In this document: positions 11 through 12,871 of the stretch, piece by piece
Position numbering within the stretch: position 1 is the first letter of the stretch
Layout: the number at the start of each line of letters is the position of its first letter
Position numbers and translations under genes: made by a program
Notes under the pieces: generated by a model
What the model was told of the DNA's origin: nothing
What the model saw: only the letters and a program-made list of their open reading frames with translations
The model's database searches: none
Sequence record: MT161459.1
Strand: one strand, 5' to 3'
Length of the DNA: 64,000 bases

Positions 11-18
11 ATTTCAAC

Positions 19-93: not shown

Positions 94-118
94 ATTTTAC
101 ATAGCCGAGAATTACACC

Positions 119-898: not shown

Positions 899-959
899 GG
901 TTGATTATGTCACCGCTAAACGCGATGGAAAGCCGCTAGGCAGAAAAGGTAAGAACACA

Positions 960-1265: not shown

Positions 1266-1456
1266 GTCAGATCTTTGAATACCGAGAATCGTTACTGCAA
1301 CCAAAACTTAAAAACAATGGAAGCGTCCTCGTGATGCAATGGTAGTGAACTGAACCCAACAGTCCAAAATGCGTGGATTAGTCATCTACATGGGAACAAA
1401 CGATTCTGTCGACTACCTTAACTAATGCTTCATTTCGATGGAGCATGTGTTAAAGT

Positions 1457-1531
1457 GCCTGTATAGTGTTAATGGTAACATGCCGTCCTTCCAAGTCGGA
1501 GTTCCGAGTTCGAGTCTCGATACAGGCTCCA
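1457..1531 (+). tRNA. tRNA-Gly(TCC)
   Basis: Acceptor GCCTGTA/TACAGGC, loop CTTCCAA, T loop TTCGAGT, CCA. Confidence 0.9.
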
Positions 1532-1541
1532 AATTTATCAT

Positions 1542-1618
1542 GGGGAATTAGCTCAGCTGGAACGAGCACCTGCCTTGCACGCAGGGGGTCATCGGTTCGA
1601 ACCCGATATTCTCCACCA
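1542..1618 (+). tRNA. tRNA-Ala(TGC)
   Basis: CCTGC-CTTGCAC-GCAGG arm, G3:U70 identity pair, CCA. Confidence 0.95.
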
Positions 1619-1642
1619 ATTTCAAAAACGAGAAAATACACT

Positions 1643-1843
1643 ATGATCTTTCTTGCACGGATTGAATACAATGAAATGCACTATCAAGGTAAGATTCGCT
1701 ATCTATCAGCTACCAAGTTGGTACACGCAGAGACTGCCGATGACGTAGAGCAGAAAGTAATAGATTTCTACGACAAGAAGTCTCGCGAATATGACGTGTA
1801 TTACAGCGTCAGATCCGTCGAGGTGGAAGAACCAATTTTATAA
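1643..1843 (+). CDS. hypothetical protein
   Basis: 66-aa ORF between tRNAs, GAG before ATG 1643. Confidence 0.65.
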   Translation: MIFLARIEYNEMHYQGKIRYLSATKLVHAETADDVEQKVIDFYDKKSREYDVYYSVRSVEVEEPIL

Positions 1844-1903
1844 CCATTTGGCTATCAGCTCACCGTTGAAAGAATACGGACAAGTCGGCTCGACCAAACG
1901 GTT
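1842..1903 (+). ncRNA. candidate small structured RNA
   Basis: Closing stem AACCATTTGG/CCAAACGGTT and inner hairpin CCGT-TGAAAGAAT-ACGG. Confidence 0.35.
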
Positions 1904-1906
1904 CAT

Positions 1907-1980
1907 AGGGGATTAGCCTAGTGGTTAGGCAGCGGATTCCAAATCCGCCTAGGAGGTTTCGAATACTTCATCCCCTGCCA
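1907..1980 (+). tRNA. tRNA-Trp(CCA)
   Basis: AGGGGAT/ATCCCCT, GCGGA-TTCCAAA-TCCGC, CCA. Confidence 0.92.
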
Positions 1981-2030
1981 ATTTCAAGAGATCTCATCAT
2001 TCCCAATTAAAGATCTCGTATTTACAACAT

Positions 2031-2105
2031 CGGTGATTCGGCAAGGGGTATGTCACTTGCTTTGGGAGCAAGCATTCGTAGGTTCGATTCCTACATCACC
2101 GACCA
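2031..2105 (+). tRNA. tRNA-Pro(TGG)
   Basis: CGGTGAT/ATCACCG, CTTGC-TTTGGGA-GCAAG, T loop TTCGATT, CCA. Confidence 0.92.
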
Positions 2106-2113
2106 ATTTCAAC

Positions 2114-2190
2114 GCGTCCTTAGCTTAGCTGGTTAGAGCAGCAGACTCTTAATTTGAAGGTCCTCGGTTCGATCCCGAGAGGACGCACCA
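2114..2190 (+). tRNA. tRNA-Lys(CTT)
   Basis: GCGTCCT/AGGACGC, loop CTCTTAA, T loop TTCGATC, CCA. Confidence 0.88.
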
Positions 2191-2198
2191 ATTTCAAT

Positions 2199-2270
2199 AC
2201 CCGTTAGAGCTCAATGAGCGCCTGACAAATGTGATGGAGGAAACCAGTGAAAGACTGGTGACGGGTACCA
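2199..2270 (+). ncRNA. tRNA-like RNA with degenerate D loop, anticodon arm and T loop
   Basis: Acceptor ACCCGTT/GACGGGT + A-CCA; D stem GCTC-AAT-GAGC; T arm ACCAG-TGAAAGA-CTGGT; anticodon stem mostly unpaired. Confidence 0.65.
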
Positions 2271-2277
2271 TTTCAAT

Positions 2278-2354
2278 ACGCCTTTAGCTCAATTGGATAG
2301 AGCAATCGGCTTTTAACCGATAGGTTCTGGGATCATGCCCCAGAGGGCGTACCA
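2278..2354 (+). tRNA. tRNA-Lys(TTT), non-canonical T loop
   Basis: ATCGG-CTTTTAA-CCGAT; T arm CTGGG-ATCATGC-CCCAG; CCA. Confidence 0.85.
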
Positions 2355-2359
2355 TATTC

Positions 2360-2605
2360 GCAAGAATCGAGCTGGTATGAGTACCTCAGCTCGTTAAATT
2401 ATCAAACGGTATCCGCGATGCGCTCGGTCAGCCAATCCGTAATGGATAAGCAGACTATCAACAGTAAGCGGCTGTATTGGTTCAACCTTCTCCCACGTCA
2501 GTGGTGTCAGGGTAGGATGATGTGGGGTTTCCCAAGTAGGCCACAGAAAATGTGATGTCCCAACGAAACGACAGCGACCCACGTTAAACGTTCATGTCTG
2601 TCAAC
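2360..2605 (+). ncRNA. candidate ~240-nt structured RNA between tRNAs
   Basis: No + strand ORF in the track; hairpins CGAGCTG..CAGCTCG, ATCC-GTAAT-GGAT, ACAG..CTGT, CCAC-GTCA-GTGG, and AGCCAAT/ATTGGTT pairing. Confidence 0.45.
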
Positions 2606-2614
2606 AAATTTTAG

Positions 2615-2691
2615 AGGGGATTCGCCTAGCTGGCCTAAGGCAGTGGACTTTGAATTCACTATCACTGGTTCGAATCCAGTATCCCCCGCCA
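2615..2691 (+). tRNA. tRNA-Gln(TTG)
   Basis: GTGGA-CTTTGAA-TTCAC, T loop TTCGAAT, CCA; A1:C72 mismatch. Confidence 0.9.
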
Positions 2692-2694
2692 ATT

Positions 2695-2763
2695 TGGTTG
2701 CATTCTCGATAGCCGTCCTGAGAAAATGAGATCGGGACTAAGCTAAAGAACATAGTGCAACCA
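2695..2763 (+). ncRNA. tRNA-sized long hairpin ending in CCA
   Basis: TGGTTGCA/TGCAACCA terminal stem, inner TTCT/AGAA, TAGC/GCTA, GTCCTG/CGGGAC. Confidence 0.45.
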
Positions 2764-2771
2764 TTGCTTTT

Positions 2772-2863
2772 GGAAGTGTGCCAGAGAGGCTGAATGGGCC
2801 AGCTTGGAAAGCTGGTGACGGCCAACAGGTCGTCCGTAGGTTCGAATCCTACCACTTCCGCCA
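2772..2863 (+). tRNA. tRNA-Ser(GGA)
   Basis: GGAAGTG/CACTTCC, CCAGC-TTGGAAA-GCTGG, long variable arm, G73, CCA. Confidence 0.95.
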
Positions 2864-2906
2864 ATTATTCACGATCGTGCAGCAGCACGATGAGAGGTAT
2901 CAGTAG

Positions 2907-3338
2907 ATGCAAAACCTAGCAAGTCTCTACGTCGGTATGGTAGAGCACATTATGGAATTTCAAAAAGATCGAACCGACATCGATCCACGATGCTACTGCA
3001 AAGAAGCGTTCCTTCGGGATTGCAGGACAATTTCTATCGATATGGGTAGAATGACTTGCAAATCTGTAGCGGCAATGACCCTTGCTCAAAAGCATTGCGG
3101 AGCTGTTGTCGTTATGAATGGAGCTCTTCGAGATTGGATCCTGGGACACCCTGGCATTGATCGGAGTCGAGTATTCACAGCAAGGGACTTTATCAAAGAG
3201 CTGCAGGAGAATGGATCTCATTACCGTATTGTGGTAATCGATGAGCCTAAATTCATCTCTGAGAAAATGGTTCGCGAGATCGTCAAGTTGTCTGCCGACA
3301 CAGGCGTGGAACATATCGTTCGTCTTGGAACACAATGA
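2907..3338 (+). CDS. hypothetical protein with degenerate P-loop NTPase-like motifs
   Basis: GRMTCKS (Walker A-like) and IVVIDEP (Walker B-like); GAGG RBS. Confidence 0.6.
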   Translation: MQNLASLYVGMVEHIMEFQKDRTDIDPRCYCKEAFLRDCRTISIDMGRMTCKSVAAMTLAQKHCGAVVVMNGALRDWILGHPGIDRSRVFTARDFIKELQENGSHYRIVVIDEPKFISEKMVREIVKLSADTGVEHIVRLGTQ

Positions 3339-3343
3339 ACAAA

Positions 3344-3440
3344 GGAAGCGTGGCAGAGTCCGGCTTATTGCAACTGACTTGAAATCAGTCGACGGTGGCA
3401 ATCCCATCGTCCGTGGGTTCAAATCCTACCGCTTCCGCCA
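3344..3440 (+). tRNA. tRNA-Ser(TGA)
   Basis: GGAAGCG/CGCTTCC, ACTGA-CTTGAAA-TCAGT, long variable arm, CCA. Confidence 0.95.
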
Positions 3441-3446
3441 AACAAT

Positions 3447-3511
3447 GAGCTCTTAGGTTAGTGAAAACCGCTGGCTGTCCAATGCCAGAGACGCGTAAGC
3501 AGAGCTCGCCA
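3447..3511 (+). ncRNA. tRNA-like RNA with 8-nt anticodon loop and vestigial T arm
   Basis: Perfect GAGCTCT/AGAGCTC + G-CCA; D arm GGTT-AGTGAA-AACC; CTGGC-TGTCCAAT-GCCAG; T arm reduced to GC-GTAA-GC. Confidence 0.65.
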
Positions 3512-3516
3512 AACAC

Positions 3517-3601
3517 GCGGATGTGGTGAAATTGGCAGTCACACTAGATTTAGGATCTAGCGCCTTCGGGCATGTCGGTTCGAGTCCGACCATCCGCACC
3601 A
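3517..3601 (+). tRNA. tRNA-Leu(TAG)
   Basis: GCGGATG/CATCCGC, CTAGA-TTTAGGA-TCTAG, variable arm, CCA. Confidence 0.95.
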
Positions 3602-3608
3602 GAATTAC

Positions 3609-3634
3609 AAGAGCCCATATGGGCTCTTTTTGTT
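3609..3634 (+). terminator. intrinsic terminator after the tRNA run
   Basis: AAGAGCCC-ATAT-GGGCTCTT + U tract. Confidence 0.85.
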
Positions 3635-3637
3635 GCC

Positions 3638-3644
3638 CTAAATA
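3638..3644 (+). promoter_or_regulatory. putative late promoter CTAAATA (also 11669, 17479, 17872, 33568, 45395, 56370, 62010)
   Basis: Recurs in intergenic positions shortly upstream of starts; resembles T4 gp55 late promoter TATAAATA. Confidence 0.6.
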
Positions 3645-3662
3645 CAAGAAAAGGAGATCGTA

Positions 3663-4052
3663 ATGGACTTTGCAAACTTTTCTAGTACACAGTCTAAGTC
3701 ACCGGCCATCGGTAATCTCATTACCAAGTTGCTAAAGAGTGTTCCGTACGTTCACCACGAGCATCTGACTACTACGTCATACGAACGTCATATCACCCTT
3801 CAACAGTATTACGAAGGGATGCCAGGAGTAGTCGATACGCTAGCGGAAGCTAGTATTGCTCGTGGGTATCCACAGAGTTTCGATGCTCAGTTCAATCTGA
3901 TATCATTCGAGCAACTCTTAAACGACGCGATGTCGGAGTGTAATGCAGTTCACAAGATTCTCGAGAAAGATGGTATGTGGGATCTGACCAATGCTCTGGA
4001 AGATATCATGACCTTCATTTCATCCGTACAGTACAAATTGCGTTTGAAATAG
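3663..4052 (+). CDS. ferritin/Dps-like four-helix protein
   Basis: HHEHL...YERH..LQQYYE....D.LAE ferritin-like pattern; AGGAG RBS. Confidence 0.65.
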   Translation: MDFANFSSTQSKSPAIGNLITKLLKSVPYVHHEHLTTTSYERHITLQQYYEGMPGVVDTLAEASIARGYPQSFDAQFNLISFEQLLNDAMSECNAVHKILEKDGMWDLTNALEDIMTFISSVQYKLRLK

Positions 4053-4081
4053 TTGACTAAGCGGGTTATCCATGAGATGAT
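4053..4081 (+). promoter_or_regulatory. sigma70-like early promoter
   Basis: TTGACT-17-GATGAT. Confidence 0.55.
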
Positions 4082-4092
4082 CTGCTTTATAA

Positions 4093-4169
4093 GGCCCCTT
4101 ATCATAATCGGTTAGTGGAGCGTCCTCATAAGGCGTAACGTCTCGGTTCGAGTCCGAGAGGGGCCACCA
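4093..4169 (+). tRNA. tRNA-Ile2(CAT, lysidine type); Met less likely
   Basis: GGCCCCT/AGGGGCC-A-CCA acceptor as in enterobacterial Ile2; loop CTCATAA. Confidence 0.8.
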
Positions 4170-4189
4170 TATTCATTTGGGAGATTCTC

Positions 4190-4495
4190 GTGCACTATAG
4201 AGATGTCGATCGAAACAAACTCATTCGACTGTCGATGTACCAACGGATGTGCCTCGAGCACAAATACCACAACGGTAAGCAGGTTGGTCGATACATCAAC
4301 GAAATGCACCAGCTCAATAAGCTGGTGTACGTTGCGGAGTCTCCCTTTAACGCGATTAGCGATAAGAAGGTGCTAATTGCTATTGCCAACAAGGTCGCAT
4401 TCGATCGTGAGCTAGCTCGCCAGAAGGATGCATTCAACTTTCAACTTCACAAAGCGTTGCACGAAGCAAACTGGGAATACGAGCACGAGAGGTAA
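4190..4495 (+). CDS. hypothetical protein
   Basis: GTG start after GGAG. Confidence 0.6.
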   Translation: MHYRDVDRNKLIRLSMYQRMCLEHKYHNGKQVGRYINEMHQLNKLVYVAESPFNAISDKKVLIAIANKVAFDRELARQKDAFNFQLHKALHEANWEYEHER

Positions 4496-4498
4496 ATT

Positions 4499-4690
4499 AT
4501 GGCGCTAATACTGTCTGATCTTCGAGAGTACATCGACAAAGATCCAAAGACCTGTCGTCGGTGTGGATATTACGGAGCCAAGTATGCTCCACTTGGAGAT
4601 AGCTCCAATGGACTATTTTGTTACAACTGCATCGATGCAGCAACATATCGACTCCAACAACTTCGACGCGAAAACAACAACCGCAACTAA
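4499..4690 (+). CDS. small Cys-rich (zinc-binding) protein
   Basis: CxxC...CxxC; GAGG RBS. Confidence 0.6.
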   Translation: MALILSDLREYIDKDPKTCRRCGYYGAKYAPLGDSSNGLFCYNCIDAATYRLQQLRRENNNRN

Positions 4691-4701
4691 GCAGGTTTAC
4701 C

Positions 4702-4971
4702 ATGATTCTCAAAATTGATGGATTTAAAAAGACCACAGTTCATTCTCGTTGGGAGATCGTTGCATTCCTCGCTCGGAAGAACATCGTCGATGAAGACTAT
4801 ATAGACGACTGCGCTGACGAGATCCGAGATATCATGAAGCGTGGGGCTGAGGTCTGTTGGGGCCAGTTGTGTCCATATCATCTCGAGATCAATGAAACCA
4901 ATTACCTCATCGTGAGTGGTGACGAAGACGAGCTTCGGACCATGATTGCAAACGCGAGAGAAGAAATCTAA
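4702..4971 (+). CDS. hypothetical protein
   Basis: ATG 4702 after AGG. Confidence 0.6.
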   Translation: MILKIDGFKKTTVHSRWEIVAFLARKNIVDEDYIDDCADEIRDIMKRGAEVCWGQLCPYHLEINETNYLIVSGDEDELRTMIANAREEI

Positions 4972-4976
4972 AATTT

Positions 4977-5056
4977 GTGTTCTTTGTAAGTCTCAGTTGG
5001 AAGAGCTGCTTGGCCGAAACCAAGCGGAGGCGTGTTCGAATCGCGCCTTAGAACAC
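4977..5056 (+). ncRNA. tRNA-like element / pseudo-tRNA without CCA
   Basis: D-like TCTC-AGTTGGAA-GAGC, GCTTGG-CCGAAA-CCAAGC arm, canonical T arm GCGTG-TTCGAAT-CGCGC, outer stem GTGTTCT/AGAACAC. Confidence 0.6.
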
Positions 5057-5125
5057 TTTATTATCGAGGAGACTTTGTGTACGAAGTTCTGTTACTTCAT
5101 TAGAGTATTCTAATGGAGATCCAAA

Positions 5126-5329
5126 ATGTCAATACAACAAAGAAGTCGCTATATCCCATATCGCAATACCTGGGGAAGATATCTGAAAAACCTAACCAAT
5201 ACGGTATCCCGAGTAACGTGGAAGCGTGAGTGTCACCTCCTACTACTCGATCCTACGTTGGAGGTTACCGATGATGCTGCCCTGAGGAAGATCGCCAAGG
5301 CCAAAGACTCTTGGGATAGCGTATGGTGA
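5126..5329 (+). CDS. hypothetical protein
   Basis: GGAG RBS, followed by terminator. Confidence 0.6.
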   Translation: MSIQQRSRYIPYRNTWGRYLKNLTNTVSRVTWKRECHLLLLDPTLEVTDDAALRKIAKAKDSWDSVW

Positions 5330-5336
5330 AAAATCA

Positions 5337-5360
5337 AACCCACTTCGGTGGGTTTTCCTT
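5337..5360 (+). terminator. terminator type B, AACCCAC-TTCG-GTGGGTT (identical at 27536, 53869, 61712)
   Basis: UUCG hairpin + U tract, four identical copies. Confidence 0.9.
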
Positions 5361-5369
5361 TATCTACTG

Positions 5370-5397
5370 TTGACTGTCTTGTATACCTGCGTATACT
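5370..5397 (+). promoter_or_regulatory. sigma70-like early promoter
   Basis: TTGACT-16-TATACT directly after terminator. Confidence 0.65.
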
Positions 5398-5426
5398 TCC
5401 CTATACAGTTTTGGAGACTTTATATT

Positions 5427-5735
5427 ATGACATTTAACATCAAACTCGAGTTAATGTCGTCGGCTGAGAATGCCGCGAAGGATGGGATCCTCGCAAAGGA
5501 TTTGGCGCGATCGTACTACGTGGATGATGAACTGACGTCATACGTCGAATCTATCATGATGTGCACGTGCCTTCCAATCTTATCAACTCGAAGTGATGAC
5601 GTCATCATACTCACGCCCAACGGTTACGTACTGTGGGCTAGTGAAGATCTGATCGCTGTAACTGAAAGTCTCTATCGCAAGCCAATCTCATTATTTGAAC
5701 TAGGAAGAGAAATATGTCTGAAAAGCTCCAGTTGA
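5427..5735 (+). CDS. hypothetical protein
   Basis: ATG 5427 after GGAG. Confidence 0.65.
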   Translation: MTFNIKLELMSSAENAAKDGILAKDLARSYYVDDELTSYVESIMMCTCLPILSTRSDDVIILTPNGYVLWASEDLIAVTESLYRKPISLFELGREICLKSSS

Positions 5736-6040
5736 ATCTCAATAGCATCAACGAACTTGGGGATCAACCGTTCGACGATCTCGATCAATTCGAGTTTGTC
5801 CGATATGACTATGATCGATTCACAACTGTCCTGCTATCTCGCATTCGCGAACTCGAGGATCGGTTTACTCGGATGTTTGGGTCTCCATGCGTTGTGTTCG
5901 GAGATGGCACTGTCGACTCGTTGAATAACATCACAAGTGGATACTATGCTGAGTACTTCGTCGTGACTGCTAATGGGGTCATGGCAATGTACGGCGAGTC
6001 GCATGCTCTGTTTGTCAGTGGACCTCACTATGGACAATGA
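5714..6040 (+). CDS. hypothetical protein
   Basis: ORF overlapping neighbours, AGGA RBS. Confidence 0.65.
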   Translation: MSEKLQLNLNSINELGDQPFDDLDQFEFVRYDYDRFTTVLLSRIRELEDRFTRMFGSPCVVFGDGTVDSLNNITSGYYAEYFVVTANGVMAMYGESHALFVSGPHYGQ

Positions 6041-6236
6041 TCGCATCCGCTTTTTCAAAGAGCTTCTTGAGGATCATCCTCATCTGTATGGAACTACCGT
6101 GTCGTGTCCGGAGTGTCGGAATATGGAGGATGATCAGTACTGCTGCACTCTGTGCTGGGGACAGCAACAAATCAGTCTCGGTGATATGATCGGCGAATTG
6201 CTGACGGAGGTGGAAGCAAATGTCCAAACGTCTTAA
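6030..6236 (+). CDS. small CxxC-containing protein
   Basis: CPEC...CCTLC. Confidence 0.6.
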   Translation: MDNDRIRFFKELLEDHPHLYGTTVSCPECRNMEDDQYCCTLCWGQQQISLGDMIGELLTEVEANVQTS

Positions 6237-6444
6237 CGCTCATGTAGTGAGGCACCCTTATCTGTCGTCATTGCACAGATGGGCAGTTGTAGCAAATAAG
6301 AAGAACAGGGAACGAGAATGGAGCGACTTCTGGTGGCTGGCGTTCAAGCTGTATCCATGCTTAGCTCACCAGGGTACTGTAACTGTCCGGAGAATATCTC
6401 AATACTCCATCGAGCTGCTATTTGAAATAGAGGGCAACAAATGA
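6220..6444 (+). CDS. hypothetical protein
   Basis: GGAGG RBS. Confidence 0.6.
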   Translation: MSKRLNAHVVRHPYLSSLHRWAVVANKKNREREWSDFWWLAFKLYPCLAHQGTVTVRRISQYSIELLFEIEGNK

Positions 6445-6767
6445 AGTATCTGATAGTCGTGCTAGCGTTGTTGCTGGCAGGATGCGAAGAAGAGAAACCG
6501 TTCAAGTCGGTGGATGTGATCGGGACTGTGACTCGATACGTTCCGGAGGAGACGCGGATAAGGTACCACGCTGATCAGAAGATCATGATATCTATCCGCG
6601 ACAAAGAAGTGCATCAACTGTCTCTAGGCAAGTGCAGTCTGGAGATGAATACCGGATTGATTGGCCACGAGGTCAAGCTACGCCGCGATATCTACTACGA
6701 TCAAGGATCCAGATATCTCATTTACGAGGGAGAGAAAGAAAAGATTCTCGAGAAATACTGTTATTAA
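6441..6767 (+). CDS. putative lipoprotein
   Basis: Signal peptide with lipobox LLLAGC. Confidence 0.7.
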   Translation: MKYLIVVLALLLAGCEEEKPFKSVDVIGTVTRYVPEETRIRYHADQKIMISIRDKEVHQLSLGKCSLEMNTGLIGHEVKLRRDIYYDQGSRYLIYEGEKEKILEKYCY

Positions 6768-6778
6768 CAAGGGGTTAC

Positions 6779-7372
6779 ATGGCTAAACTTTTCTATTTTT
6801 ACGCAGCAATGAACAGTGGTAAGTCCACTCAACTGCTCCAAGTGGCACACAATTACACAGAACGCGATCAGAACGTGTTGCTACTGAAACCGAAGATCGA
6901 CACCAGAACGTCCAACACCATCGGATCTCGGATCGGGATCTCCAAAGCGTGCTTGTCCATCGACGTTGACGTCAATCTGGTTGACTTCTTCAAAGCGCAG
7001 ACGACCAAATACGATTGCATCCTCGTTGATGAAGCTCAGTTCCTGACGGAAGATCAAGTATGGCAACTGTCTGATATAGTGGATAAGCTCCACATCCCAG
7101 TCATGTGTTACGGACTGCGAACTGACTTCTTGGGCAATCTATTCGAAGGATCCAGGACGTTGTTGGCCATCGCTGATAGCATTACGGAAGTTCGCGGGAT
7201 CTGCGAATGTGGCCGGAAGGCTTGCATGGTTGCTCGGATTGACTCCAATGGAAATGCGATCCTCCGAGGAGAGCAGGTTTGCATTGGGGCTGAGGAGACG
7301 TACGTCAGTTTTTGTCGTGCTTGCTGGAAAAAGAAGTTGAAAACTAACTGGACTCGTAAGACAATCTATTAA
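6779..7372 (+). CDS. tdk: thymidine kinase (type II)
   Basis: YAAMNSGKS P-loop, VDEAQF, YGLRTDF, C-terminal Zn cysteines; ATG 6779 after GGGG. Confidence 0.95.
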   Translation: MAKLFYFYAAMNSGKSTQLLQVAHNYTERDQNVLLLKPKIDTRTSNTIGSRIGISKACLSIDVDVNLVDFFKAQTTKYDCILVDEAQFLTEDQVWQLSDIVDKLHIPVMCYGLRTDFLGNLFEGSRTLLAIADSITEVRGICECGRKACMVARIDSNGNAILRGEQVCIGAEETYVSFCRACWKKKLKTNWTRKTIY

Positions 7373-7394
7373 CTACAAACCAAAGGAAACTGAA

Positions 7395-8789
7395 ATGTCA
7401 ATGTTGTTCGATGCAATGTCTGAAAAAGACGCCCGCACTATGAACGGTGCAATCACGCACTCCACATCCGGTCAAGCCAACGTAGACTTGTTCTTCATCG
7501 TTGGCGCTTCTCGCGGCAAGAAAATTCGCGCTGAGTTTGCCAAAGCATATCGCGAGAATATGGACTACGCTGTCCGCATTCTTCAATGGGCGCGCGACGT
7601 TCGTGGTGGTGCTGGTGAGCGCGGTATCTTCATCGATTTGCTCCGCACCCTGTACACTCTGAATCGTGCGCATGCAGTATCCATTCTGTATAAGACTCCA
7701 GAGATTGGCCGCTGGAAGGATGTGGTTGAGATGTTCAACTCTCCTCTGCGCGCGGAAGTTCTGGATATGTTAGAGTTCGCTCTGCGTTCCGAGGACAGTC
7801 TGGCTGCTAAGTGGATCCCGCGTAAAGGTCCGGTAGCAAGCGCTCTGGCTCGCCGCATGAAGTGGAGCTCTAAACAGCTTCGTCAGACGCTGGTTGCTCT
7901 GAGCAACACAGTTGAGCAGAAGATGTGCGCGCGTCAGTGGAACGACATTGATTTCAGTAAGCTCCCGTCGATCGCATCCAGTCGCTACCAGAAGGCGTTC
8001 CATCGCCAAGCTCCAACCGCGTACACCAAGTACCTGGAGAGTCTGGAGAAAGGCGAGACCAAGATCAATGCCGGCGCCATCTATCCGCACACTATCGTCG
8101 GGAATCTGAGCAATGGCGTAGCTGCTGCTGCAGAGGCTCAGTGGAAAGCTCTTCCGAACTACATGGAAGGTACCAATGAGCGAATCCTGCCAGTGGTTGA
8201 CGTTTCTGGATCCATGAGCTGTCCGGCCGGCGGCAGCGGTTCGGTTAGTTGCATGACCGTAGCCATTTCGCTGGGTTTGTACATCTCCGAGCGCAATGAA
8301 GGGATTTTCCACAACCAGTTTGTGACGTTCAGCGAAGAACCAACATTCGTGACCCTGACCAAGCCGACTCTCCAAGGCCGTTGCAGCGAGATGTCTCGTT
8401 CGGATTGGGGTTACAATACCGATCTGCAGCGCACATTCTCTATCCTGTTGGATCGTGCAGTCAAATGCGCAGTCCCGCAAGATCAAATGCCGACCAAGAT
8501 CCTGATCTTGTCCGACATGGAGTTCGACGCAGCGTGTGATCGTGCCACCAACTACGACGCCATTGAGCGTAAGTATGCCGCCGCAGGATACGAGATGCCA
8601 TCCATCGTATTCTGGAACCTGAATGCTCGTGCCGGCAATGTACCAGTCAAGGCAGGCGTTCGCAACACTGCTCTGATCTCGGGTTTCTCTCCAGCTATCT
8701 TGACTTCTGTTCTGGGATGTCAGACAATGACTCCATTGTCAGTCATGCAAGACGCGATTATGAAAGATCGCTACGACTGGATTGTCTAA
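7395..8789 (+). CDS. DUF2828/TROVE(Ro60)-like helical protein with C-terminal vWA domain
   Basis: DLFF.VGASRG, RDVRGGAGER, LAAKWIPR, MIDAS DVSGS, ILSDMEFD, IVFWNL. Confidence 0.8.
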   Translation: MSMLFDAMSEKDARTMNGAITHSTSGQANVDLFFIVGASRGKKIRAEFAKAYRENMDYAVRILQWARDVRGGAGERGIFIDLLRTLYTLNRAHAVSILYKTPEIGRWKDVVEMFNSPLRAEVLDMLEFALRSEDSLAAKWIPRKGPVASALARRMKWSSKQLRQTLVALSNTVEQKMCARQWNDIDFSKLPSIASSRYQKAFHRQAPTAYTKYLESLEKGETKINAGAIYPHTIVGNLSNGVAAAAEAQWKALPNYMEGTNERILPVVDVSGSMSCPAGGSGSVSCMTVAISLGLYISERNEGIFHNQFVTFSEEPTFVTLTKPTLQGRCSEMSRSDWGYNTDLQRTFSILLDRAVKCAVPQDQMPTKILILSDMEFDAACDRATNYDAIERKYAAAGYEMPSIVFWNLNARAGNVPVKAGVRNTALISGFSPAILTSVLGCQTMTPLSVMQDAIMKDRYDWIV

Positions 8790-8826
8790 CCAATGTGGGC
8801 CCTCGGGCCCACTTCATAGAGGCATT

Positions 8827-9198
8827 ATGTTAACTAAATTTGAAGGTCAGGCTCGTGCATTTGCAACGTTCCTCGCAGCTGTTAAGCACGATCATAGGTC
8901 AGATTGGAGTTATCGCCACACCACACTGAGCCATCGAGCTTCGCAAATAGATGTATCATTCTATTCTCCGAATGGGGAATGTGGGGAGTGGTGTACATTC
9001 GAGCTTCCGGTGGCTGTGCTGTTCGACTCGGTGGCGGCAATTATGGCATTTCACGAGATCAAAACGCAAATGCAAGTTGCTACGCGAGAAAGGCAGATGA
9101 ACCAACTTCGAGATCGTCAACAACAGCGGATTGAAGATGAAGCTCGCGAACGCGCGCAATATGAGATCCTCAAGCAAAAATTCGGAGATGATGAATGA
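8827..9198 (+). CDS. hypothetical protein, C-terminal coiled coil
   Basis: GAGG RBS; ends ERAQYEILKQKFG. Confidence 0.65.
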   Translation: MLTKFEGQARAFATFLAAVKHDHRSDWSYRHTTLSHRASQIDVSFYSPNGECGEWCTFELPVAVLFDSVAAIMAFHEIKTQMQVATRERQMNQLRDRQQQRIEDEARERAQYEILKQKFGDDE

Positions 9199-9542
9199 AT
9201 CTGGATAACATCTACAGCTTCTGTGACCAGTTTGTGGTAGCATTGAATGAAGCTCAGTTGTATGACAGCAACGAGTGGGGAATGTACCACGATGTGGCCA
9301 TTTCGCGTCACAGTCGTGCTGCGAAGCTCACCTTTGCTATCCCATATTTCATGCCTGAAATGTACGACGTGTTGTTGCCACTCCACTGCTTCAACGATGA
9401 GCGTACTATGGAGAAGCATCTTGCGGACTCCATTCAGACCATGCGTCTCTTTGCAGCGAATCATAGGGCGTCTCAAACTGAATATCAAATGGCCCTAGAG
9501 CATCGCGCTCGTCAACGTAAATGGTGGATGTTTTGGAAATAG
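9195..9542 (+). CDS. hypothetical protein
   Basis: ATGA overlap with upstream gene. Confidence 0.6.
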   Translation: MNLDNIYSFCDQFVVALNEAQLYDSNEWGMYHDVAISRHSRAAKLTFAIPYFMPEMYDVLLPLHCFNDERTMEKHLADSIQTMRLFAANHRASQTEYQMALEHRARQRKWWMFWK

Positions 9543-9943
9543 AAACCCAATCTGATGTAGTCAAAACGCTAAAGATCCTGTACGACATGGGCGATCAAAT
9601 CGCCAAGATGTTGACCGATTCGTGCTACTATGCTCATTACACAGTCACATCGTGCAAATGGGAAATGGATGACGTTACCATCGATGACTCCGATGGTTGT
9701 TGTGCTATGAAGTTCGTTTCGCGAGAGGACAACGTATACCGTTGGTTTGCAGAGCTCGATCGAATGTTGGATCCGGAGTACGTACAATCCGAACTGCGGA
9801 GTGTCCGCAATCTGACCGATCAATACAAAGCTAAGATGGCAGAATCTCGTAGACTCAAGGCCGACTCTGTCATTGCTGAAACCGAACGTCGTGAACGTCG
9901 CGAGTTGGAACGTCTCCAAGCAAAGTATGGGACTCAGTCATGA
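9521..9943 (+). CDS. hypothetical protein, C-terminal coiled coil
   Basis: Ends ERRELERLQAKYG; start uncertain. Confidence 0.6.
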   Translation: MVDVLEIETQSDVVKTLKILYDMGDQIAKMLTDSCYYAHYTVTSCKWEMDDVTIDDSDGCCAMKFVSREDNVYRWFAELDRMLDPEYVQSELRSVRNLTDQYKAKMAESRRLKADSVIAETERRERRELERLQAKYGTQS

Positions 9944-10206
9944 GTACAGCCGAGAGTATCCGTAGCCTCAATCGGTATGCAATTGACCACGTATCGTTCC
10001 TGAACTCTATCGAGTTCATGGGATCCAACGAATGGCGTTTTGAGGACGCCATCGTTCATGCTAGCGGTCGCGGCACAATTAGAGTCAACTTCAAAAGTCA
10101 TTGCCGATCTGAGGTAGTTGAATTGAAATACAACGAGTTTGACTCGCCAGACCAAATCAAATTAGCGTTTCTGCATCGCAAAAACATCATTCTTGGCGTT
10201 GACTGA
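9940..10206 (+). CDS. hypothetical protein
   Basis: ATGA overlap. Confidence 0.6.
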   Translation: MSTAESIRSLNRYAIDHVSFLNSIEFMGSNEWRFEDAIVHASGRGTIRVNFKSHCRSEVVELKYNEFDSPDQIKLAFLHRKNIILGVD

Positions 10207-10252
10207 ATCATAATGTGCGGTACAATAGCTGCATCAACTAGAGGAAACGATT

Positions 10253-10453
10253 ATGACTGCACAACTGAGCAATGACCAAATCGAAATGATCTCTGGCCGT
10301 ATCCTGAAGCTGGATGCCCAACGCAACAGCCTCTTGATCCACGCCGAGAACGTTCGACTCGAGATGTTGGAACTCCGTAAGCTCCTGGCGGAGAATTTCA
10401 AAGACGATCTCCCGATGGAAATCCGACCACTCCCGTCGCGGATGCGAGCATGA
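10253..10453 (+). CDS. hypothetical protein
   Basis: GAGG RBS after TTGACT..TACAAT promoter. Confidence 0.65.
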   Translation: MTAQLSNDQIEMISGRILKLDAQRNSLLIHAENVRLEMLELRKLLAENFKDDLPMEIRPLPSRMRA

Positions 10454-10677
10454 TCGACTATGGGAAGTGGTTGATTGACAATCAAGGGATGTATACCGTA
10501 TCCATCGATGGGTCATCTTGGAGCACAGAAGATGGTACATCGTATACGTCTCCATGCTCGTTGTCATTTCGTGGTACTGGATTTCATGGGTATAGGACTT
10601 TGGAAGATGCCATCGAACATGCCGTATCGATGTATCCGGATTCAGTAAAATACGTCGATCTAATGTGCGATTGCTAA
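10450..10677 (+). CDS. hypothetical protein
   Basis: ATGA overlap. Confidence 0.6.
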   Translation: MIDYGKWLIDNQGMYTVSIDGSSWSTEDGTSYTSPCSLSFRGTGFHGYRTLEDAIEHAVSMYPDSVKYVDLMCDC

Positions 10678-10710
10678 GATAGTGATCGCACTTTTCAAGA
10701 GGAATAGATT

Positions 10711-11172
10711 ATGACTTTTGTAGATTTCCTGACTTCGGTATTTCCGAAGAGTACCAAAACCATTCGCCAAGCTGGATATTTGCTCGGTCAGCTGGATGGA
10801 GAGAAGAACCAACGCGATCGCGAGAAGATGTCACGCGATCTGATCCAACAAATTAAATTCCCAGTGGGATGCCTGGTTATCTCCTGCGATAGCTCCCATC
10901 CGATGCACCTCGTGGAGATCACCAGATACGAGGCCAACATGAATGGTATTCCGTTCGGTCGCGATCTGATCACCGGCGAAGACGTTATGCTGTTCAGCAC
11001 CATCTTCAACTACACAGAGAACACGGTACGCGCATTAGCTAAGCTCGAGATGCACGAGCGTCTGATGATCGCTAACAAGATGCACTGTCGGATCCCACAG
11101 ACTGCCATCCAAGAGTACGATGTGGAGATGTTGGTATCAATTGGCAACGCTTTCGTGGAGAATGAAGAATGA
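10711..11172 (+). CDS. hypothetical protein
   Basis: GAGG RBS, 153 aa. Confidence 0.7.
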   Translation: MTFVDFLTSVFPKSTKTIRQAGYLLGQLDGEKNQRDREKMSRDLIQQIKFPVGCLVISCDSSHPMHLVEITRYEANMNGIPFGRDLITGEDVMLFSTIFNYTENTVRALAKLEMHERLMIANKMHCRIPQTAIQEYDVEMLVSIGNAFVENEE

Positions 11173-11672
11173 TCTACGCTCAAGTTGCTCGGATGTTAGC
11201 CATCCAATCCAGTCGTCGGATCTATATCGGATCTAGTGCATTGTGGAAGTTTCGTCAGCGGGCATCAGAAGCTGTATGCATCAAGTGCCAGTATGAGGAT
11301 GACTGGAAGAAAAGCCATCCCGAGATGTATCCACTCGATCCTGCAGCAGTTGAAACGTGGCGCGCTTACACGGACTGTCTGTCTGGGACATTGATTCTTG
11401 GCGAGACTAAAGCTACATTGCGCGCAGAAATCGTCAATCCGAATATGTTCTCAGTTCGCGGTCGTTCGTTAGAGAAGACTATGGAGTTCGAATTGACTCC
11501 AGAGCTGACGATGGATATCTTTGGGGAATACATCAAATCTCACTGCCACCATGTAGTCGAAGATGAGTACGAGCGTCGAGAGATTGCTCGAGTGACTCAA
11601 GAACAAGAGGAGCTGATGGCTACCATGCTGTCCGAGGCCGCGTCAATGGATTGTGACTGGGAAAACTCCTAA
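11169..11672 (+). CDS. hypothetical protein
   Basis: ATGA overlap, 167 aa. Confidence 0.7.
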   Translation: MIYAQVARMLAIQSSRRIYIGSSALWKFRQRASEAVCIKCQYEDDWKKSHPEMYPLDPAAVETWRAYTDCLSGTLILGETKATLRAEIVNPNMFSVRGRSLEKTMEFELTPELTMDIFGEYIKSHCHHVVEDEYERREIARVTQEQEELMATMLSEAASMDCDWENS

Positions 11673-11683
11673 ATAAGTTTAGG

Positions 11684-11715
11684 TGTGGGGTAAGTCAGGA
11701 GATACTTACCCCACA
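11684..11715 (+). other. perfect 12-bp inverted repeat
   Basis: TGTGGGGTAAGT-N8-ACTTACCCCACA between CTAAATA and the tRNA-like RNA. Confidence 0.8.
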
Positions 11716-11720
11716 GAGAG

Positions 11721-11855
11721 ATAATACCGCGATCGAGTAGCTCAATGGTAGAGCAACGTAAAATGCATCCTGTCAAGGATGAATTCTGCAATCAAATCGC
11801 CTGTTAAGCCGTAGGTTGTGTGGTTCGAATCCGCGCCTCGATCGCAGTATTATTT
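11721..11855 (+). ncRNA. tRNA-Asn(GTT)-derived RNA with 40-nt insertion in the anticodon stem and extended acceptor stem
   Basis: GATCGAG/CTCGATC acceptor, GCTC-AATGGTA-GAGC D arm, ACG[40 nt]GC-CTGTTAA-GCCGT, T loop TTCGAAT, no CCA, flanks ATAATAC/GTATTAT pair. Confidence 0.75.
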
Positions 11856-11882
11856 CAACAAAGCACCACAAGGTAAAACGTC

Positions 11883-12155
11883 ATGGATTTTTTGACTGAG
11901 AAGCAGTTGCGTAATCTGACCACTGAACGTCTGAATGCTCTTCGCAAGACCGTTTTGAAAGCTCGTGCATCAGCTGAATACAACGCCGATCAAGATCCCA
12001 GCTCACAGGCTGACAAGGAACGCGCTCGCGGTTTGATCGAGTACTACGAACTGATCAAGTCCGTCATGGACGATCGTGAACACATTGAACGCAGCACCAA
12101 ACCGAAACAGAAGGGTCACAATCGTGATTCGATCAAAAGGATGACTTGGGAATGA
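11883..12155 (+). CDS. hypothetical protein
   Basis: AAGGT RBS. Confidence 0.65.
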   Translation: MDFLTEKQLRNLTTERLNALRKTVLKARASAEYNADQDPSSQADKERARGLIEYYELIKSVMDDREHIERSTKPKQKGHNRDSIKRMTWE

Positions 12156-12463: not shown

Positions 12464-12509
12464 ACTAATGCGCTGACTACGGTCGGCGCATCTTCATAAG
12501 GGCAATATC

Positions 12510-12862: not shown

Positions 12863-12871
12863 GAGTCTCGC

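What the first reader, a model, noticed from the sequence alone, without database searches (positions are those of the whole stretch)
1842..11855. A family of tRNA-mimic RNAs co-transcribed with real tRNAs
Seen: at least four elements keep tRNA architecture but break it in different ways. 2199-2270 and 3447-3511 have intact 7-bp acceptor stems plus encoded NCCA but degenerate anticodon/T arms; 4977-5056 has canonical D and T arms but a 6-nt anticodon loop and no CCA; 11731-11846 is a tRNA-Asn with a 40-nt insert. Two further tRNA-sized hairpins (1842-1903, 2695-2763) occupy tRNA slots. Retention of long stems while decoding parts decay argues against simple pseudogenisation. Known: phage tRNAs counter host anticodon nucleases (PrrC, PARIS/AriB, retron PtuAB). 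Inference: a set of decoy or regulatory tRNA mimics (nuclease decoys, aaRS/CCA-enzyme/EF-Tu/RelA modulators), possibly partnered with the Ro60-like and RNA-repair proteins nearby.
Basis: partly seen in the sequence, partly recalled or inferred. Interest (0 to 1): 0.82.

Follow-up and report, generated by a model that had tools for sequence, protein, structure and literature searches.

The report
Phage tRNA-operon RNAs, one Ro60-linked
The tRNA operon of this T4-like Aeromonas phage also encodes several small structured RNAs that are not working tRNAs; they belong to at least four unrelated kinds, including a tRNA-shaped RNA that probably partners with the phage's Ro60-like protein and a 62-nt hairpin conserved almost letter for letter across distant phage families.

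Summary
The window is Aeromonas phage Ahp1_CNU-2021 (T4-like), bases 1-64000. All six elements exist as described, but they are not one family.

- **A (1842-1903):** a non-tRNA hairpin. Its 45-nt core is 94-100% conserved in about 50 phage genomes of at least four families, with clear covariation. It has no Rfam match.
- **F (11731-11846):** a tRNA-Asn body with a conserved 40-nt module in the 5' strand of the anticodon stem. The same module sits in Asn, Met/Ile and Arg tRNA bodies of cyanophages and uncultured phages. In every case found, a homolog of the window's DUF2828 protein (7395-8789) lies close by, on the same strand wherever I worked out the orientation. That protein's predicted fold matches Ro60. 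F is most likely a Y-RNA analogue.
- **E (4977-5056):** a tRNA-derived cloverleaf with a 6-nt loop and no CCA. It is conserved with compensatory changes across Aeromonas T4-like phages.
- **B and D:** acceptor-stem-plus-NCCA mini tRNA-likes found only in Ahp1's closest relatives. They are well conserved but show no covariation.
- **C:** a hairpin with a variable tip that one relative lacks.

The anticodon-nuclease decoy idea remains untested. The Ro60 partnership is supported for F only.

The parts
1842..1903 (+). Element A: a 62-nt irregular hairpin. It has a variable outer stem, a conserved core (GCUAUCAGCUCACCGUUGAAAGAAUACGGACAAGUCGGCUCGAC) and an apical CCGU/ACGG stem. It lies between the stop codon of ORF 1643-1843 and tRNA-Trp.
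   Evidence: The core is 94-100% identical in 50 phage records and 21 IMG/VR contigs. The outer stem is always complementary but differs in sequence. Inner pairs covary: pair 16-49 is AU in 12, GC in 8 and UA in 3 sequences; 97.7% of cells are paired; 0 of 500 shuffles reach this. No Rfam hit at E<=10. Only 2 hits in 185,579 bacterial genomes.
2199..2270 (+). Element B: a 72-nt mini tRNA-like. It has a 7-bp acceptor stem, A-CCA, a 6-bp T-like arm, a stub D arm and no anticodon arm. It is followed by the same UUUCAAUAC trailer as the real tRNAs.
   Evidence: Sequence and fold (z -3.0). It is 98.6-100% identical in three relatives whose neighbouring tRNA-Lys genes match at only 74-85% identity. 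No other relatives found by BLAST or covariance model.
2695..2763 (+). Element C: a 69-nt hairpin with a 9-10-bp basal stem (UGGUUGCAU/GUGCAACCA) between tRNA-Gln and tRNA-Ser(GGA).
   Evidence: Fold z -4.9. The basal stem is kept in L044 and L047, but the tip carries an 11-nt deletion in one and a 10-nt insertion in the other. The element is precisely absent from L046.
3447..3511 (+). Element D: a 65-nt cloverleaf lacking a T arm. It has a 7-bp acceptor stem, G-CCA, a D arm, and a 5-bp arm with an 8-nt loop (UGUCCAAU).
   Evidence: Fold z -2.4. It is 95-97% identical in L046 and L047, with changes in two loop bases; L047 also has a C4-to-A change that breaks one acceptor pair. It is absent from L044. 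No distant homologs.
4977..5056 (+). Element E: an 80-nt tRNA-derived cloverleaf with an invariant D region, a 6-nt loop C(C/A)GAAA, a canonical T arm and no CCA. It starts directly after the stop codon of ORF 4702-4971.
   Evidence: Homologs in PX29, Aeh1, Ah1 and phiAS5. 98.5% of cells are paired, 9 pairs change on both sides, and 0 of 500 shuffles reach this. Its covariance model scores true tRNAs at roughly 15-41 bits but E copies at 94 bits or more.
11731..11846 (+). Element F: a tRNA-Asn(GUU)-shaped RNA carrying the 40-nt module. There is no encoded CCA. The acceptor plus T stack is 7+6 bp.
   Evidence: Rfam tRNA 31.2 bits, with a 51-nt insertion in the model alignment. Homologs in Aeh1-group phages, cyanophages BUCT-ZZ01 and B3, and five IMG/VR contigs.
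11759..11798 (+). The inserted module of F: (G)UAAAA, then a 6-bp hairpin (CAUCCU/AGGAUG), then AAUUCUGCAAUC. UUCUGCAAU is at 11784-11792.
   Evidence: The same module, at the same position of the anticodon stem, occurs in tRNA bodies of different identity. The hairpin sequence covaries (CAUCCU, CAUUCU, AUAUCUA, CAAUUCUG) while the flanks stay conserved. The YCNGCAA motif is enriched upstream of DUF2828 genes.
7395..8789 (+). Gene for a 464-aa DUF2828/DUF7788 protein with a Ro60-like fold: a helical-repeat ring plus a vWA domain with the MIDAS motif DVSGSM. It is the proposed protein partner of F.
   Evidence: Pfam hits. AlphaFold2 model with a 22-sequence alignment has pLDDT 83.6. The ten best Foldseek PDB matches are all Ro60, with E 9e-8 to 7e-6 and TM 0.4-0.6, mostly 0.5-0.6. 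Homologs in mycobacteriophages are annotated 'Ro-like RNA binding protein'.
1457..4169 (+). tRNA operon context: 11 of the 12 real tRNAs lie here (Gly, Ala, Trp, Pro, Lys-CUU, Lys-UUU, Gln, Ser-GGA, Ser-UGA, Leu, Met). Each encodes CCA, most followed by an AUUUCAA-like trailer. tRNA-Cys is at 19-93.
   Evidence: ARAGORN and Rfam; sequence.
3609..3628 (+). First + strand intrinsic-terminator-like hairpin after the tRNA block, just past tRNA-Leu.
   Evidence: No + strand terminator-like site lies between 1457 and 3609.

Best explanation
The tRNA operon of this T4-like phage carries at least four unrelated kinds of small structured RNA. They sit in tRNA-sized slots, so the enzymes that cut out the neighbouring tRNAs (RNase P at the next tRNA's 5' end, plus 3' trimming) would probably release them; this step is inferred, not shown.

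1. F is a tRNA body with a conserved 40-nt module built into its anticodon stem. The module most likely binds the phage's Ro60-like protein (7395-8789). F would then be a Y-RNA analogue with the opposite layout to bacterial YrlA: the RNA ends form a tRNA acceptor stem and the protein-binding part is internal. The tRNA-shaped part would connect the ring protein to tRNA-handling machinery, or present an authentic Asn anticodon loop.
2. E is a tRNA descendant kept for its shape, not for decoding.
3. A is a separate, widely spread phage RNA motif. Its nearly invariant loops suggest it binds a conserved factor.
4. B and D are young, lineage-specific mini tRNA-likes that keep only what RNase P, the CCA enzyme and similar proteins recognise. 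C may be no more than a processing hairpin.

Shown here: structures, conservation, covariation, the gene-RNA linkage and the protein fold. Inferred: processing, protein binding and biological role.
For: - A: the core is conserved in Straboviridae, Schitoviridae, Otagovirus and 98-kb Acinetobacter phages. The outer stem covaries and the inner pairs covary. In all eight IMG/VR loci where tRNAs flank it, it lies in a gap between tRNAs on the tRNAs' strand.
- E: covariation in three helices over five phage lineages.
- F, the RNA: the module is conserved while the tRNA bodies differ (Asn GUU, Met/Ile CAU, Arg UCG). The cyanophage bodies are canonical, and both BUCT-ZZ01 copies end in CCA. T stems and the module hairpin covary.
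- F, the linkage: in cyanophages the RNAs lie 200-400 nt downstream of a protein 40% identical to window 7395-8789. All five new IMG/VR members (L054, L091/L092, L111, L120, L131) have a DUF2828 homolog in the same locus; in the four where I worked out both positions (L054, L091, L111, L120) it is on the same strand, 0.1-6.8 kb away. No remaining pattern-hit locus outside this family carries the gene.
- F, the motif: the module's 3' motif is enriched in the 400 nt upstream of DUF2828 genes. There are 15 in 28 loci, against 2.1 in shuffles and 4.7 from the background rate, P about 1e-4.
- The protein: the predicted fold matches Ro60. Family members are annotated Ro-like in mycobacteriophages. 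A distant DUF2828 locus has a sub-threshold YrlA hit 2 kb upstream on the same strand.
- B and D: they are more conserved than the flanking tRNAs and ORFs.
Against: - There are no expression, processing or binding data.
- F has no Rfam YrlA match and lacks the GNCGAAN0-1G Ro-binding motif (PMC4201824).
- The linkage is not universal. Vibrio phage phi-ST2 and Campylobacter phage CP8 carry the gene with no F-type RNA nearby.
- The loci used for motif enrichment are partly related to one another.
- B and D show no compensatory changes, and two of their seven differences among relatives break a pair. D, A and C are each missing from one or more close relatives.
- A's fold energy is not unusual (z = -0.8) and no common neighbouring gene was found.
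Confidence: 0.6

Rival explanations
1. The 40-nt module of F is an intron. It would be removed to give working tRNAs (Asn, Met/Ile, Arg), perhaps with the Ro60-like protein and phage RNA-repair enzymes helping. That would make it a small mobile intervening sequence in phage tRNA genes.
For: The cyanophage copies are canonical tRNAs once the module is removed: 7-bp acceptor stem, 5-bp T stem, a 7-nt anticodon loop with U33, and CCA in both BUCT-ZZ01 copies. The same module sits at the same stem position in bodies of different identity. PX29's neighbouring aberrant tRNA is annotated as a two-piece join.
Against: No known bacterial or phage mechanism removes a 40-nt insert from an anticodon stem. 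There are no group I intron features or Rfam hits. The Aeromonas copies have lost tRNA features: no CCA although all 12 real tRNAs in the window encode it, a 13-bp acceptor/T stack, and a U-U mismatch in the Aeh1-group anticodon stem. A separate tRNA-Asn exists in Ahp1 and in Aeh1.
Confidence: 0.2
2. This is the first reader's reading: one family of tRNA mimics that act as decoys or modulators against host anticodon nucleases or tRNA-binding enzymes.
For: F carries an authentic Asn anticodon loop (CUGUUAA), and its relatives carry Arg and Met/Ile loops. B and D keep the acceptor stem and CCA. Phage tRNAs are known to counter tRNA-targeting defences (PMC10264068, PMC11464382).
Against: The six elements share no sequence or structure with one another. 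A is not tRNA-shaped. B has no anticodon arm, and E and D have 6- and 8-nt loops, so most lack the part an anticodon nuclease would cut.
Confidence: 0.15
3. B, C and D (and the further degenerate copies at the other genome end) are decaying tRNA genes or plain 'punctuation' hairpins. Their stems would persist only because they keep the polycistronic precursor correctly cut, and they would have no function of their own.
For: They are confined to Ahp1's clade. They are gained and lost between genomes about 90% identical. They show no compensatory changes and have two pair-breaking changes. The tip of C is free to vary. Two more acceptor-plus-CCA degenerate copies occur at the other genome end.
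Against: B has 0-2 differences in 72 nt in three relatives, while adjacent real tRNAs match at only 74-85% identity and ORFs at 70-95%. The non-stem parts of B and D are conserved too.
Confidence: 0.35
4. Element A acts at the DNA level, for example as a recombination site, a homing site or a replication hairpin, and not as an RNA.
For: Its sequence conservation across unrelated phages is extreme. Elements come and go next to homing-endonuclease-like genes in relatives. About half the loci have no tRNAs nearby.
Against: The outer stem changes sequence completely yet stays complementary. An invariant U-G pair (19-46) would be an A-C mismatch on the other strand. Where tRNAs are present the orientation always matches theirs.
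Confidence: 0.05

Closest known systems
Bacterial and phage Y RNAs of the YrlA type with Ro60/Rsr (Chen et al. 2014, PMC4201824; Thermus phage phiLo Ro60-Yrl, PMC12135203)
   Same: A ring-shaped Ro60-fold protein is encoded within a few kb, on the same strand, of a small RNA that joins a protein-binding part to a tRNA-like part. Phage examples are known, and mycobacteriophage members of this same protein family are annotated Ro-like.
   Different: F is not permuted: its ends form a tRNA acceptor stem and the conserved module is internal, in the anticodon stem. It keeps an authentic anticodon loop. It has no GNCGAA motif and no Rfam YrlA score. The protein matches Pfam DUF2828/DUF7788; no TROVE family appeared among its hits.
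Phage T4 stable RNAs, species 1 and 2 (rnaC, rnaD), in the T4 tRNA cluster
   Same: They are tRNA-sized or larger non-tRNA RNAs encoded in the tRNA operon of a T4-type phage. rnaC has a canonical T arm and a terminal stem. That their function has remained unknown since the 1970s is my own recollection.
   Different: None of A-F shows sequence similarity to them: there were no T4 hits, and the covariance-model hits on the T4 locus were weak. T4 was not seen to carry the DUF2828 gene or motif A, but I did not check this directly.
tRNA genes with intervening sequences (bacterial group I introns in anticodon loops; archaeal bulge-helix-bulge introns at non-canonical positions)
   Same: An insert interrupts the anticodon arm of an otherwise canonical tRNA, and the same insert type occurs in several tRNA identities.
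   Different: The insert is 40 nt, far too small for a group I intron. It sits in the stem, not the loop, and no splicing enzyme for it is known in bacteria or phages.
Phage tRNAs that counter tRNA-targeting defences (PARIS, retron PtuAB, PrrC; PMC11464382, PMC10264068)
   Same: They are encoded in phage tRNA clusters and have anticodon loops matching tRNAs that nucleases target.
   Different: Those are working tRNAs with variant loops. A-E cannot decode, and F carries a 40-nt insert.
tRNA pseudogenes and tRNA-like punctuation in polycistronic transcripts
   Same: B, D and possibly C keep acceptor-like stems at tRNA positions. GenBank labels E and F as tRNA-Pseudo.
   Different: E and F show compensatory evolution across genera. 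B is more conserved than its working neighbours.

Membership tests
tRNA (Rfam RF00005 / ARAGORN) | Scores at or above the Rfam gathering cut-off (29 bits), or is called by ARAGORN | tested here: not met
   A, B, C, D and E get no tRNA hit even at E<=10. Only F passes, at 31.2 bits, and only by skipping a 51-nt insertion.
tRNA (Rfam RF00005 / ARAGORN) | 7-nt anticodon loop on a continuous 5-bp stem | tested here: not met
   B has no such arm. D has an 8-nt loop and E a 6-nt loop. F has a 7-nt CUGUUAA loop, but its stem is interrupted after nt 29.
tRNA (Rfam RF00005 / ARAGORN) | 7-bp acceptor stem with discriminator base and CCA (encoded in all 12 real tRNAs of this operon) | tested here: inconclusive
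   Met by B (A-CCA) and D (G-CCA). E and F have the stem but no CCA. A and C have neither.
YrlA-type Y RNA (Rfam RF02553) | Match to the YrlA covariance model (gathering cut-off 69 bits) | tested here: not met
   No YrlA hit at E<=10 in window 1-13000 or on F alone. A distant DUF2828 locus (L015) scores 38.9 bits, E 4e-5.
YrlA-type Y RNA (Rfam RF02553) | Encoded within about 4 kb of the Ro60 ortholog, on the same strand (criterion of PMC4201824) | tested here: met
   F starts 2.9 kb downstream of gene 7395-8789 on the same strand. In L091, L120, L111 and the cyanophages the distance is 0.1-1.8 kb.
YrlA-type Y RNA (Rfam RF02553) | 5'/3' ends form the Ro-binding stem with GNCGAAN0-1G; tRNA-like part permuted (T arm, closed acceptor-like stem, D arm) | tested here: not met
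   F's ends form an ordinary acceptor stem. The arm order is D, anticodon, T, and there is no CGAA motif in the module.
YrlA-type Y RNA (Rfam RF02553) | Physically bound by the Ro60 protein | not testable with these tools
   This needs co-purification or gel-shift experiments.
Ro60 / TROVE proteins | Ring of helical repeats followed by a vWA domain with a MIDAS motif | tested here: met
   AlphaFold2 model with pLDDT 83.6. The ten best PDB matches are all Ro60, E 9e-8 to 7e-6, over the full length. DVSGSM at residues 269-274 aligns to the MIDAS motif of phage phiLo Ro60.
Ro60 / TROVE proteins | Sequence-level match to curated Ro60 families | tested here: not met
   Pfam gives DUF2828 and DUF7788. 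vWA_Ro60 scores only 18.8 bits against a cut-off of 27.7. The PDB profile search gives E = 0.09 to TROVE proteins.
Group I intron in a tRNA gene | Insert of more than about 200 nt in the anticodon loop with a group I core | tested here: not met
   The insert is 40 nt and sits in the stem. No intron family hit in Rfam.
Archaeal-type bulge-helix-bulge tRNA intron | Two 3-nt bulges separated by a 4-bp helix at the exon-intron junctions | not tested
   I only looked by eye and saw no obvious motif. No formal search was run.
T4 species 1/2 RNAs (rnaC, rnaD) | Sequence or structural homology to T4 rnaC/rnaD | tested here: not met
   No T4 hits in the BLAST searches for A-F. The only covariance-model hits on the T4 locus L043 are weak: real tRNAs, plus an E-model hit (17.4 bits) overlapping rnaC.

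The most novel reading that the evidence does not exclude
F-type RNAs would be a new class of Ro60-partner RNA in which the protein-binding module is grafted into the anticodon stem of an otherwise complete, possibly chargeable tRNA. This would give phages a Ro60-like particle that plugs directly into tRNA or translation machinery, or the module would be the first small, protein-assisted tRNA intron in bacterial viruses. Independently, motif A would be a new pan-phage functional RNA, such as a binder of a universal host factor or a catalytic RNA.
Probability: 0.3. Interest if true: 0.85.

Novelty: new variant of a known kind. Interest (0 to 1): 0.72.

Why it matters
- Why phages carry a Ro60-like protein is unknown. 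This family occurs in at least 710 sequenced phages, and outside mycobacteriophages and Thermus phage phiLo its RNA partners are unknown.
- A defined RNA (F), a short candidate recognition motif (UUCUGCAAU / UACAGCAA) and a cultivable phage-host pair make the question directly testable.
- Motif A is a compact RNA with strong covariation, absent from Rfam, and shared by phages of Aeromonas, Enterobacter, Serratia, Salmonella, Pseudomonas and Acinetobacter. Conservation at that level usually marks an interaction with something universal.
- The non-tRNA stable RNAs of T4's tRNA cluster have, to my knowledge, had no known function for decades. This operon shows that such passengers are diverse and evolve under selection.
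- For annotation, 'tRNA-Pseudo' labels in phage genomes can hide functional RNAs.

Tried and rejected
- **One family:** rejected. The elements share no sequence with one another, and the models for B, D and E do not find the other elements beyond a weak tRNA-level match of E's model to F (16.7 bits).
- **A mimics a host RNA:** rejected at sequence level. Its core pattern hits only 2 of 185,579 bacterial genomes.
- **A has a fixed protein neighbour:** not found. Its neighbours are RtcB, an exoribonuclease, ERF and YqaJ recombinases, a terminase and a methylase.
- **A goes with the Ro60-like gene:** rejected. Apart from Aeh1 and PX29, no fetched A locus holds the gene, although in Pseudomonas phage Astolliot it lies about 7 kb from the A copy.
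- **Distant homologs of B, C and D:** none by BLAST or covariance models. The weak hits were real tRNAs.
- **E outside Aeromonas phages:** a pattern scan found only Aeh1, PX29, phiAS5 and Ah1.
- **Single-sequence structure prediction of the protein:** failed, with pLDDT 46. It was repeated with an alignment.
- **F as the phage's only tRNA-Asn:** rejected. An 82-nt tRNA-Asn lies at 215641-215722 of the genome.
- **YrlA-like RNA next to the gene in Campylobacter phage CP8:** only artefactual hits spanning adjacent tRNAs.
- **Own promoters:** the promoter scan was not above shuffles, so no claim is made.
- **Literature:** I found no description of DUF2828 phage proteins with tRNA-embedded RNAs, nor of motif A.

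Full report
**Source and setting.** The window is bases 1-64000 of Aeromonas phage Ahp1_CNU-2021 (MT161459.1), a T4-like member of the Straboviridae. ARAGORN and Rfam agree on 12 real tRNAs between 19 and 4169 on the + strand. Each encodes its CCA, and most are followed by an AUUUCAA-like trailer. The first + strand terminator-like hairpin after the block 1457-3601 is at 3609-3628. Co-transcription of A-D with the tRNAs is therefore plausible but not shown. GenBank already labels 4980-5054 and 11731-11844 as 'tRNA-Pseudo'; the other four elements are unannotated.

**Checking the observation.**
- B has a 7-bp acceptor stem, A-CCA, a 6-bp T-like arm and a stub D arm.
- D has a 7-bp acceptor stem, G-CCA, a D arm, a 5-bp arm with an 8-nt loop, and a 2-bp/GUAA stub in place of a T arm.
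- E has a closing stem, a D-like region, a 6-bp stem with a 6-nt loop, a canonical T arm and no CCA.
- F is a tRNA-Asn(GUU) body with 40 extra bases at 11759-11798, lying between nt 29 and 30 of the anticodon stem's 5' strand. Rfam aligns it as a tRNA with a 51-nt insertion.
- A and C are hairpins filling gaps between tRNAs.

An acceptor stem plus NCCA is not rare by chance: 36 on the + strand against about 20 in shuffles. The case therefore rests on comparison with other genomes.

**Element A.** BLAST found a 44-48-nt core of A at 94-100% identity in 50 phage records. They include T4-like phages of Aeromonas, Enterobacter and Serratia, N4-like Salmonella phages, Pseudomonas phage Astolliot and 98-kb Acinetobacter phages. 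In three of the four loci examined it lies among annotated tRNAs; in Enterobacter phage CIP9 no tRNAs are annotated, but a tRNA-like sequence follows it directly. A pattern scan added 21 IMG/VR contigs, giving 23 distinct sequences.

The flanking stem has a different sequence in nearly every lineage yet stays complementary, at 5-16 bp. Inside the core, pair 16-49 is AU in 12 sequences, GC in 8 and UA in 3, with none unpaired. Pair 15-51 switches from CG to UA. Overall 97.7% of cells pair, five pairs change on both sides, and no shuffle or slid register comes close. Loop positions 27 and 32 also change together (G...A to U...G).

An invariant U-G pair, and the shared orientation with tRNAs, place the RNA on the + strand. 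Roughly half of the IMG/VR loci have no tRNAs. There the neighbours vary: RtcB, an exoribonuclease, recombinases and a terminase. The core is essentially absent from bacterial genomes, with 2 hits in 185,579, and it matches no Rfam family. A is a real and apparently undescribed phage RNA motif. It is rod-shaped, not tRNA-shaped.

**Element F and the Ro60-like protein.** F has relatives in the Aeh1 group of Aeromonas phages and, unexpectedly, in freshwater cyanophages. The conserved part is the insert: GUAAAA, then a 6-8-bp hairpin whose sequence covaries, then UYCYGCAAY. The tRNA bodies differ: Asn GUU and Met/Ile CAU in BUCT-ZZ01, and Arg UCG in B3. The cyanophage bodies are canonical, and both BUCT-ZZ01 copies end in CCA.

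In both cyanophages the RNAs lie 200-400 nt downstream of a protein 40% identical to window 7395-8789. I scanned IMG/VR with a pattern for the module plus a T loop and filtered for an acceptor stem. Together with two further pattern-hit loci that carry the gene, this gave five new members: L054, L091/L092, L111, L120 and L131. Every one has a homolog of that protein in the same locus. In the four where I worked out both positions it is on the same strand, at about 105 nt (L091), 620 nt (L120), 1.8 kb (L111) and 6.8 kb (L054). No remaining pattern-hit locus outside this family carries the gene.

The protein matches Pfam DUF2828 plus DUF7788. With a 22-sequence alignment, AlphaFold2 gives pLDDT 83.6. 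The ten best PDB matches are all Ro60, including the Thermus phage phiLo protein (E 9e-8 to 7e-6, full length). Its DVSGSM aligns with the Ro60 MIDAS motif. The family occurs in 710 phage records, and its mycobacteriophage members are annotated 'Ro-like RNA binding protein'. Chen et al. reported YrlA-type Y RNAs next to Ro60 in 22 phages (PMC4201824). One distant DUF2828 locus here has a sub-threshold YrlA hit 2 kb upstream on the same strand.

The 3' motif of the module also recurs just upstream of DUF2828 genes in unrelated phages. It is at -28 in Vibrio phage phi-ST2, at -86 and -158 in Campylobacter phage CP8, and at -23, -46 and -52 elsewhere. That is 15 in 28 loci, against 2.1 in shuffles and 4.7 from the background rate.

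I infer that the module is this protein's binding site and that F is a Y-RNA analogue. It fails the YrlA tests for model score, topology and the CGAA motif, so it is not a YrlA member. I rate it a new variant that works on the same plan.

The main rival is that the module is an intron. The canonical cyanophage bodies favour that view. Against it, the Aeromonas copies have lost CCA and have a 13-bp acceptor/T stack, a separate tRNA-Asn exists, and no removal mechanism is known.

**Element E.** Homologs exist in PX29, Aeh1, Ah1 and phiAS5 at the same position in the gene order. The closing stem, the middle hairpin (GCUUGG, ACUGGG or GAACGG) and the T stem all change with compensation. The D region and the C(C/A)GAAA loop are fixed. 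In all, 98.5% of cells pair, nine pairs change on both sides, and 0 of 500 shuffles reach this. A model of E scores real tRNAs at roughly 15-41 bits and E copies at 94 bits or more. E is therefore a tRNA descendant under selection for shape. It lies 2.4 kb upstream of the Ro60-like gene, but I have no independent evidence linking the two.

**Elements B, C and D.** None has relatives in the phage database. Close relatives of Ahp1 (93-95% protein identity) were recovered from public assemblies through the Ro60-like protein.
- B is present in all three relatives that cover the site, at 98.6-100% identity, although the adjacent tRNA-Lys genes match at only 74-85% identity.
- D is 95-97% identical in two relatives and absent from a third.
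- C keeps its basal stem but has an 11-nt deletion or a 10-nt insertion at the tip, and one relative lacks it exactly.

No compensatory changes were seen, and two of the seven differences break a pair. Covariance models found nothing further. Two more degenerate acceptor-plus-CCA copies sit at the other end of the genome. B looks constrained. D and C could be recent decay products or processing hairpins.

**Comparison with what is known.** The nearest precedents are Ro60 with Y RNAs (for F) and the T4 species 1 and 2 RNAs. T4 rnaC has a canonical T arm but shares no sequence with A-F. The literature searches found no description of motif A or of module-bearing tRNAs next to DUF2828 genes.

Noticed in passing
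window 2355-2614: This 260-nt spacer between tRNA-Lys(UUU) and tRNA-Gln is 98-99% identical in three relatives, while the flanking tRNAs match at only 75-91% identity. GenBank places a 45-aa ORF there (2418-2555). It has no Rfam hit and an unremarkable fold energy (z -0.3). It could be a further non-coding RNA or a conserved micro-ORF.
   Followed up: partly
window 1284-1410; also L152 7578-7638 and about 7750-7830 (Ahp1 genome 215.6 kb); L111 and L120 near their DUF2828 genes: These are hairpins whose 5' arm is followed by UUAC(U/A)GCAA(C/U) and an A-rich stretch. The motif resembles the 3' part of the F module and the motif upstream of DUF2828 genes. In Ahp1 one copy precedes tRNA-Gly and another precedes the 82-nt tRNA-Asn. 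Fold energies are not significant.
   Followed up: partly
L006 15851-15972 and 16118-16239 (Aeh1); L007 14850-14972 and 15119-15235 (PX29): At the site matching F, Aeh1-group phages carry three aberrant tRNA-likes in tandem. One has two T arms, each preceded by AUCGAGAA(A)CG. One is the F homolog. One has a roughly 55-nt insert and is annotated tRNA-Val or a two-piece tRNA-Leu. Ahp1 has only F.
   Followed up: partly
L019 4283-4363: An 81-nt match to Rfam tmRNA (68.8 bits, above the gathering cut-off of 47) lies inside the tRNA cluster of an uncultured phage that also carries a DUF2828 gene. It may be a minimal tmRNA-like RNA.
   Followed up: no
window 17903-21544: A 1213-aa protein has a weak PARP catalytic-domain hit (E 1.4e-5, just under the Pfam cut-off). 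A protein of similar size sits at the same place in the gene order in Aeh1 and PX29 (not compared directly), preceded there by an ADP-ribosylglycohydrolase-like gene.
   Followed up: no
window 1457-1531, 1907-1980, 2772-2863: The GenBank tRNA annotation disagrees with ARAGORN and Rfam. tRNA-Gly(UCC) is not annotated, tRNA-Trp(CCA) is labelled pseudo-Pro, and tRNA-Ser(GGA) is labelled pseudo-Gly.
   Followed up: yes
L044 2377-2913 and 4899-5447 compared with window 1622-1907: In one close relative, T5orf172-type (homing-endonuclease-like) genes sit in the tRNA cluster, one of them where Ahp1 has ORF 1643-1843 plus element A. tRNA and RNA cassettes are swapped at roughly 80-nt granularity between genomes about 90% identical.
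   Followed up: partly
L033 6663-6724 and L037 5295-5356: Motif A lies 30 nt downstream of an RtcB RNA ligase gene in one contig, and about 100 nt upstream of an Rv2179c-like 3'-5' exoribonuclease gene in another. This hints at a link to RNA repair or turnover.
   Followed up: no
L152 8270-8345 and 8350-8423 (Ahp1 genome about 216.27-216.42 kb); L044 554-627: Two more degenerate tRNA-likes with intact acceptor stems and CCA-type ends lie at the other end of the genome. One has a CUUUUCG loop, and ARAGORN calls it tRNA-Lys(UUU) in the relatives. The B/D class is therefore larger than the window shows.
   Followed up: partly
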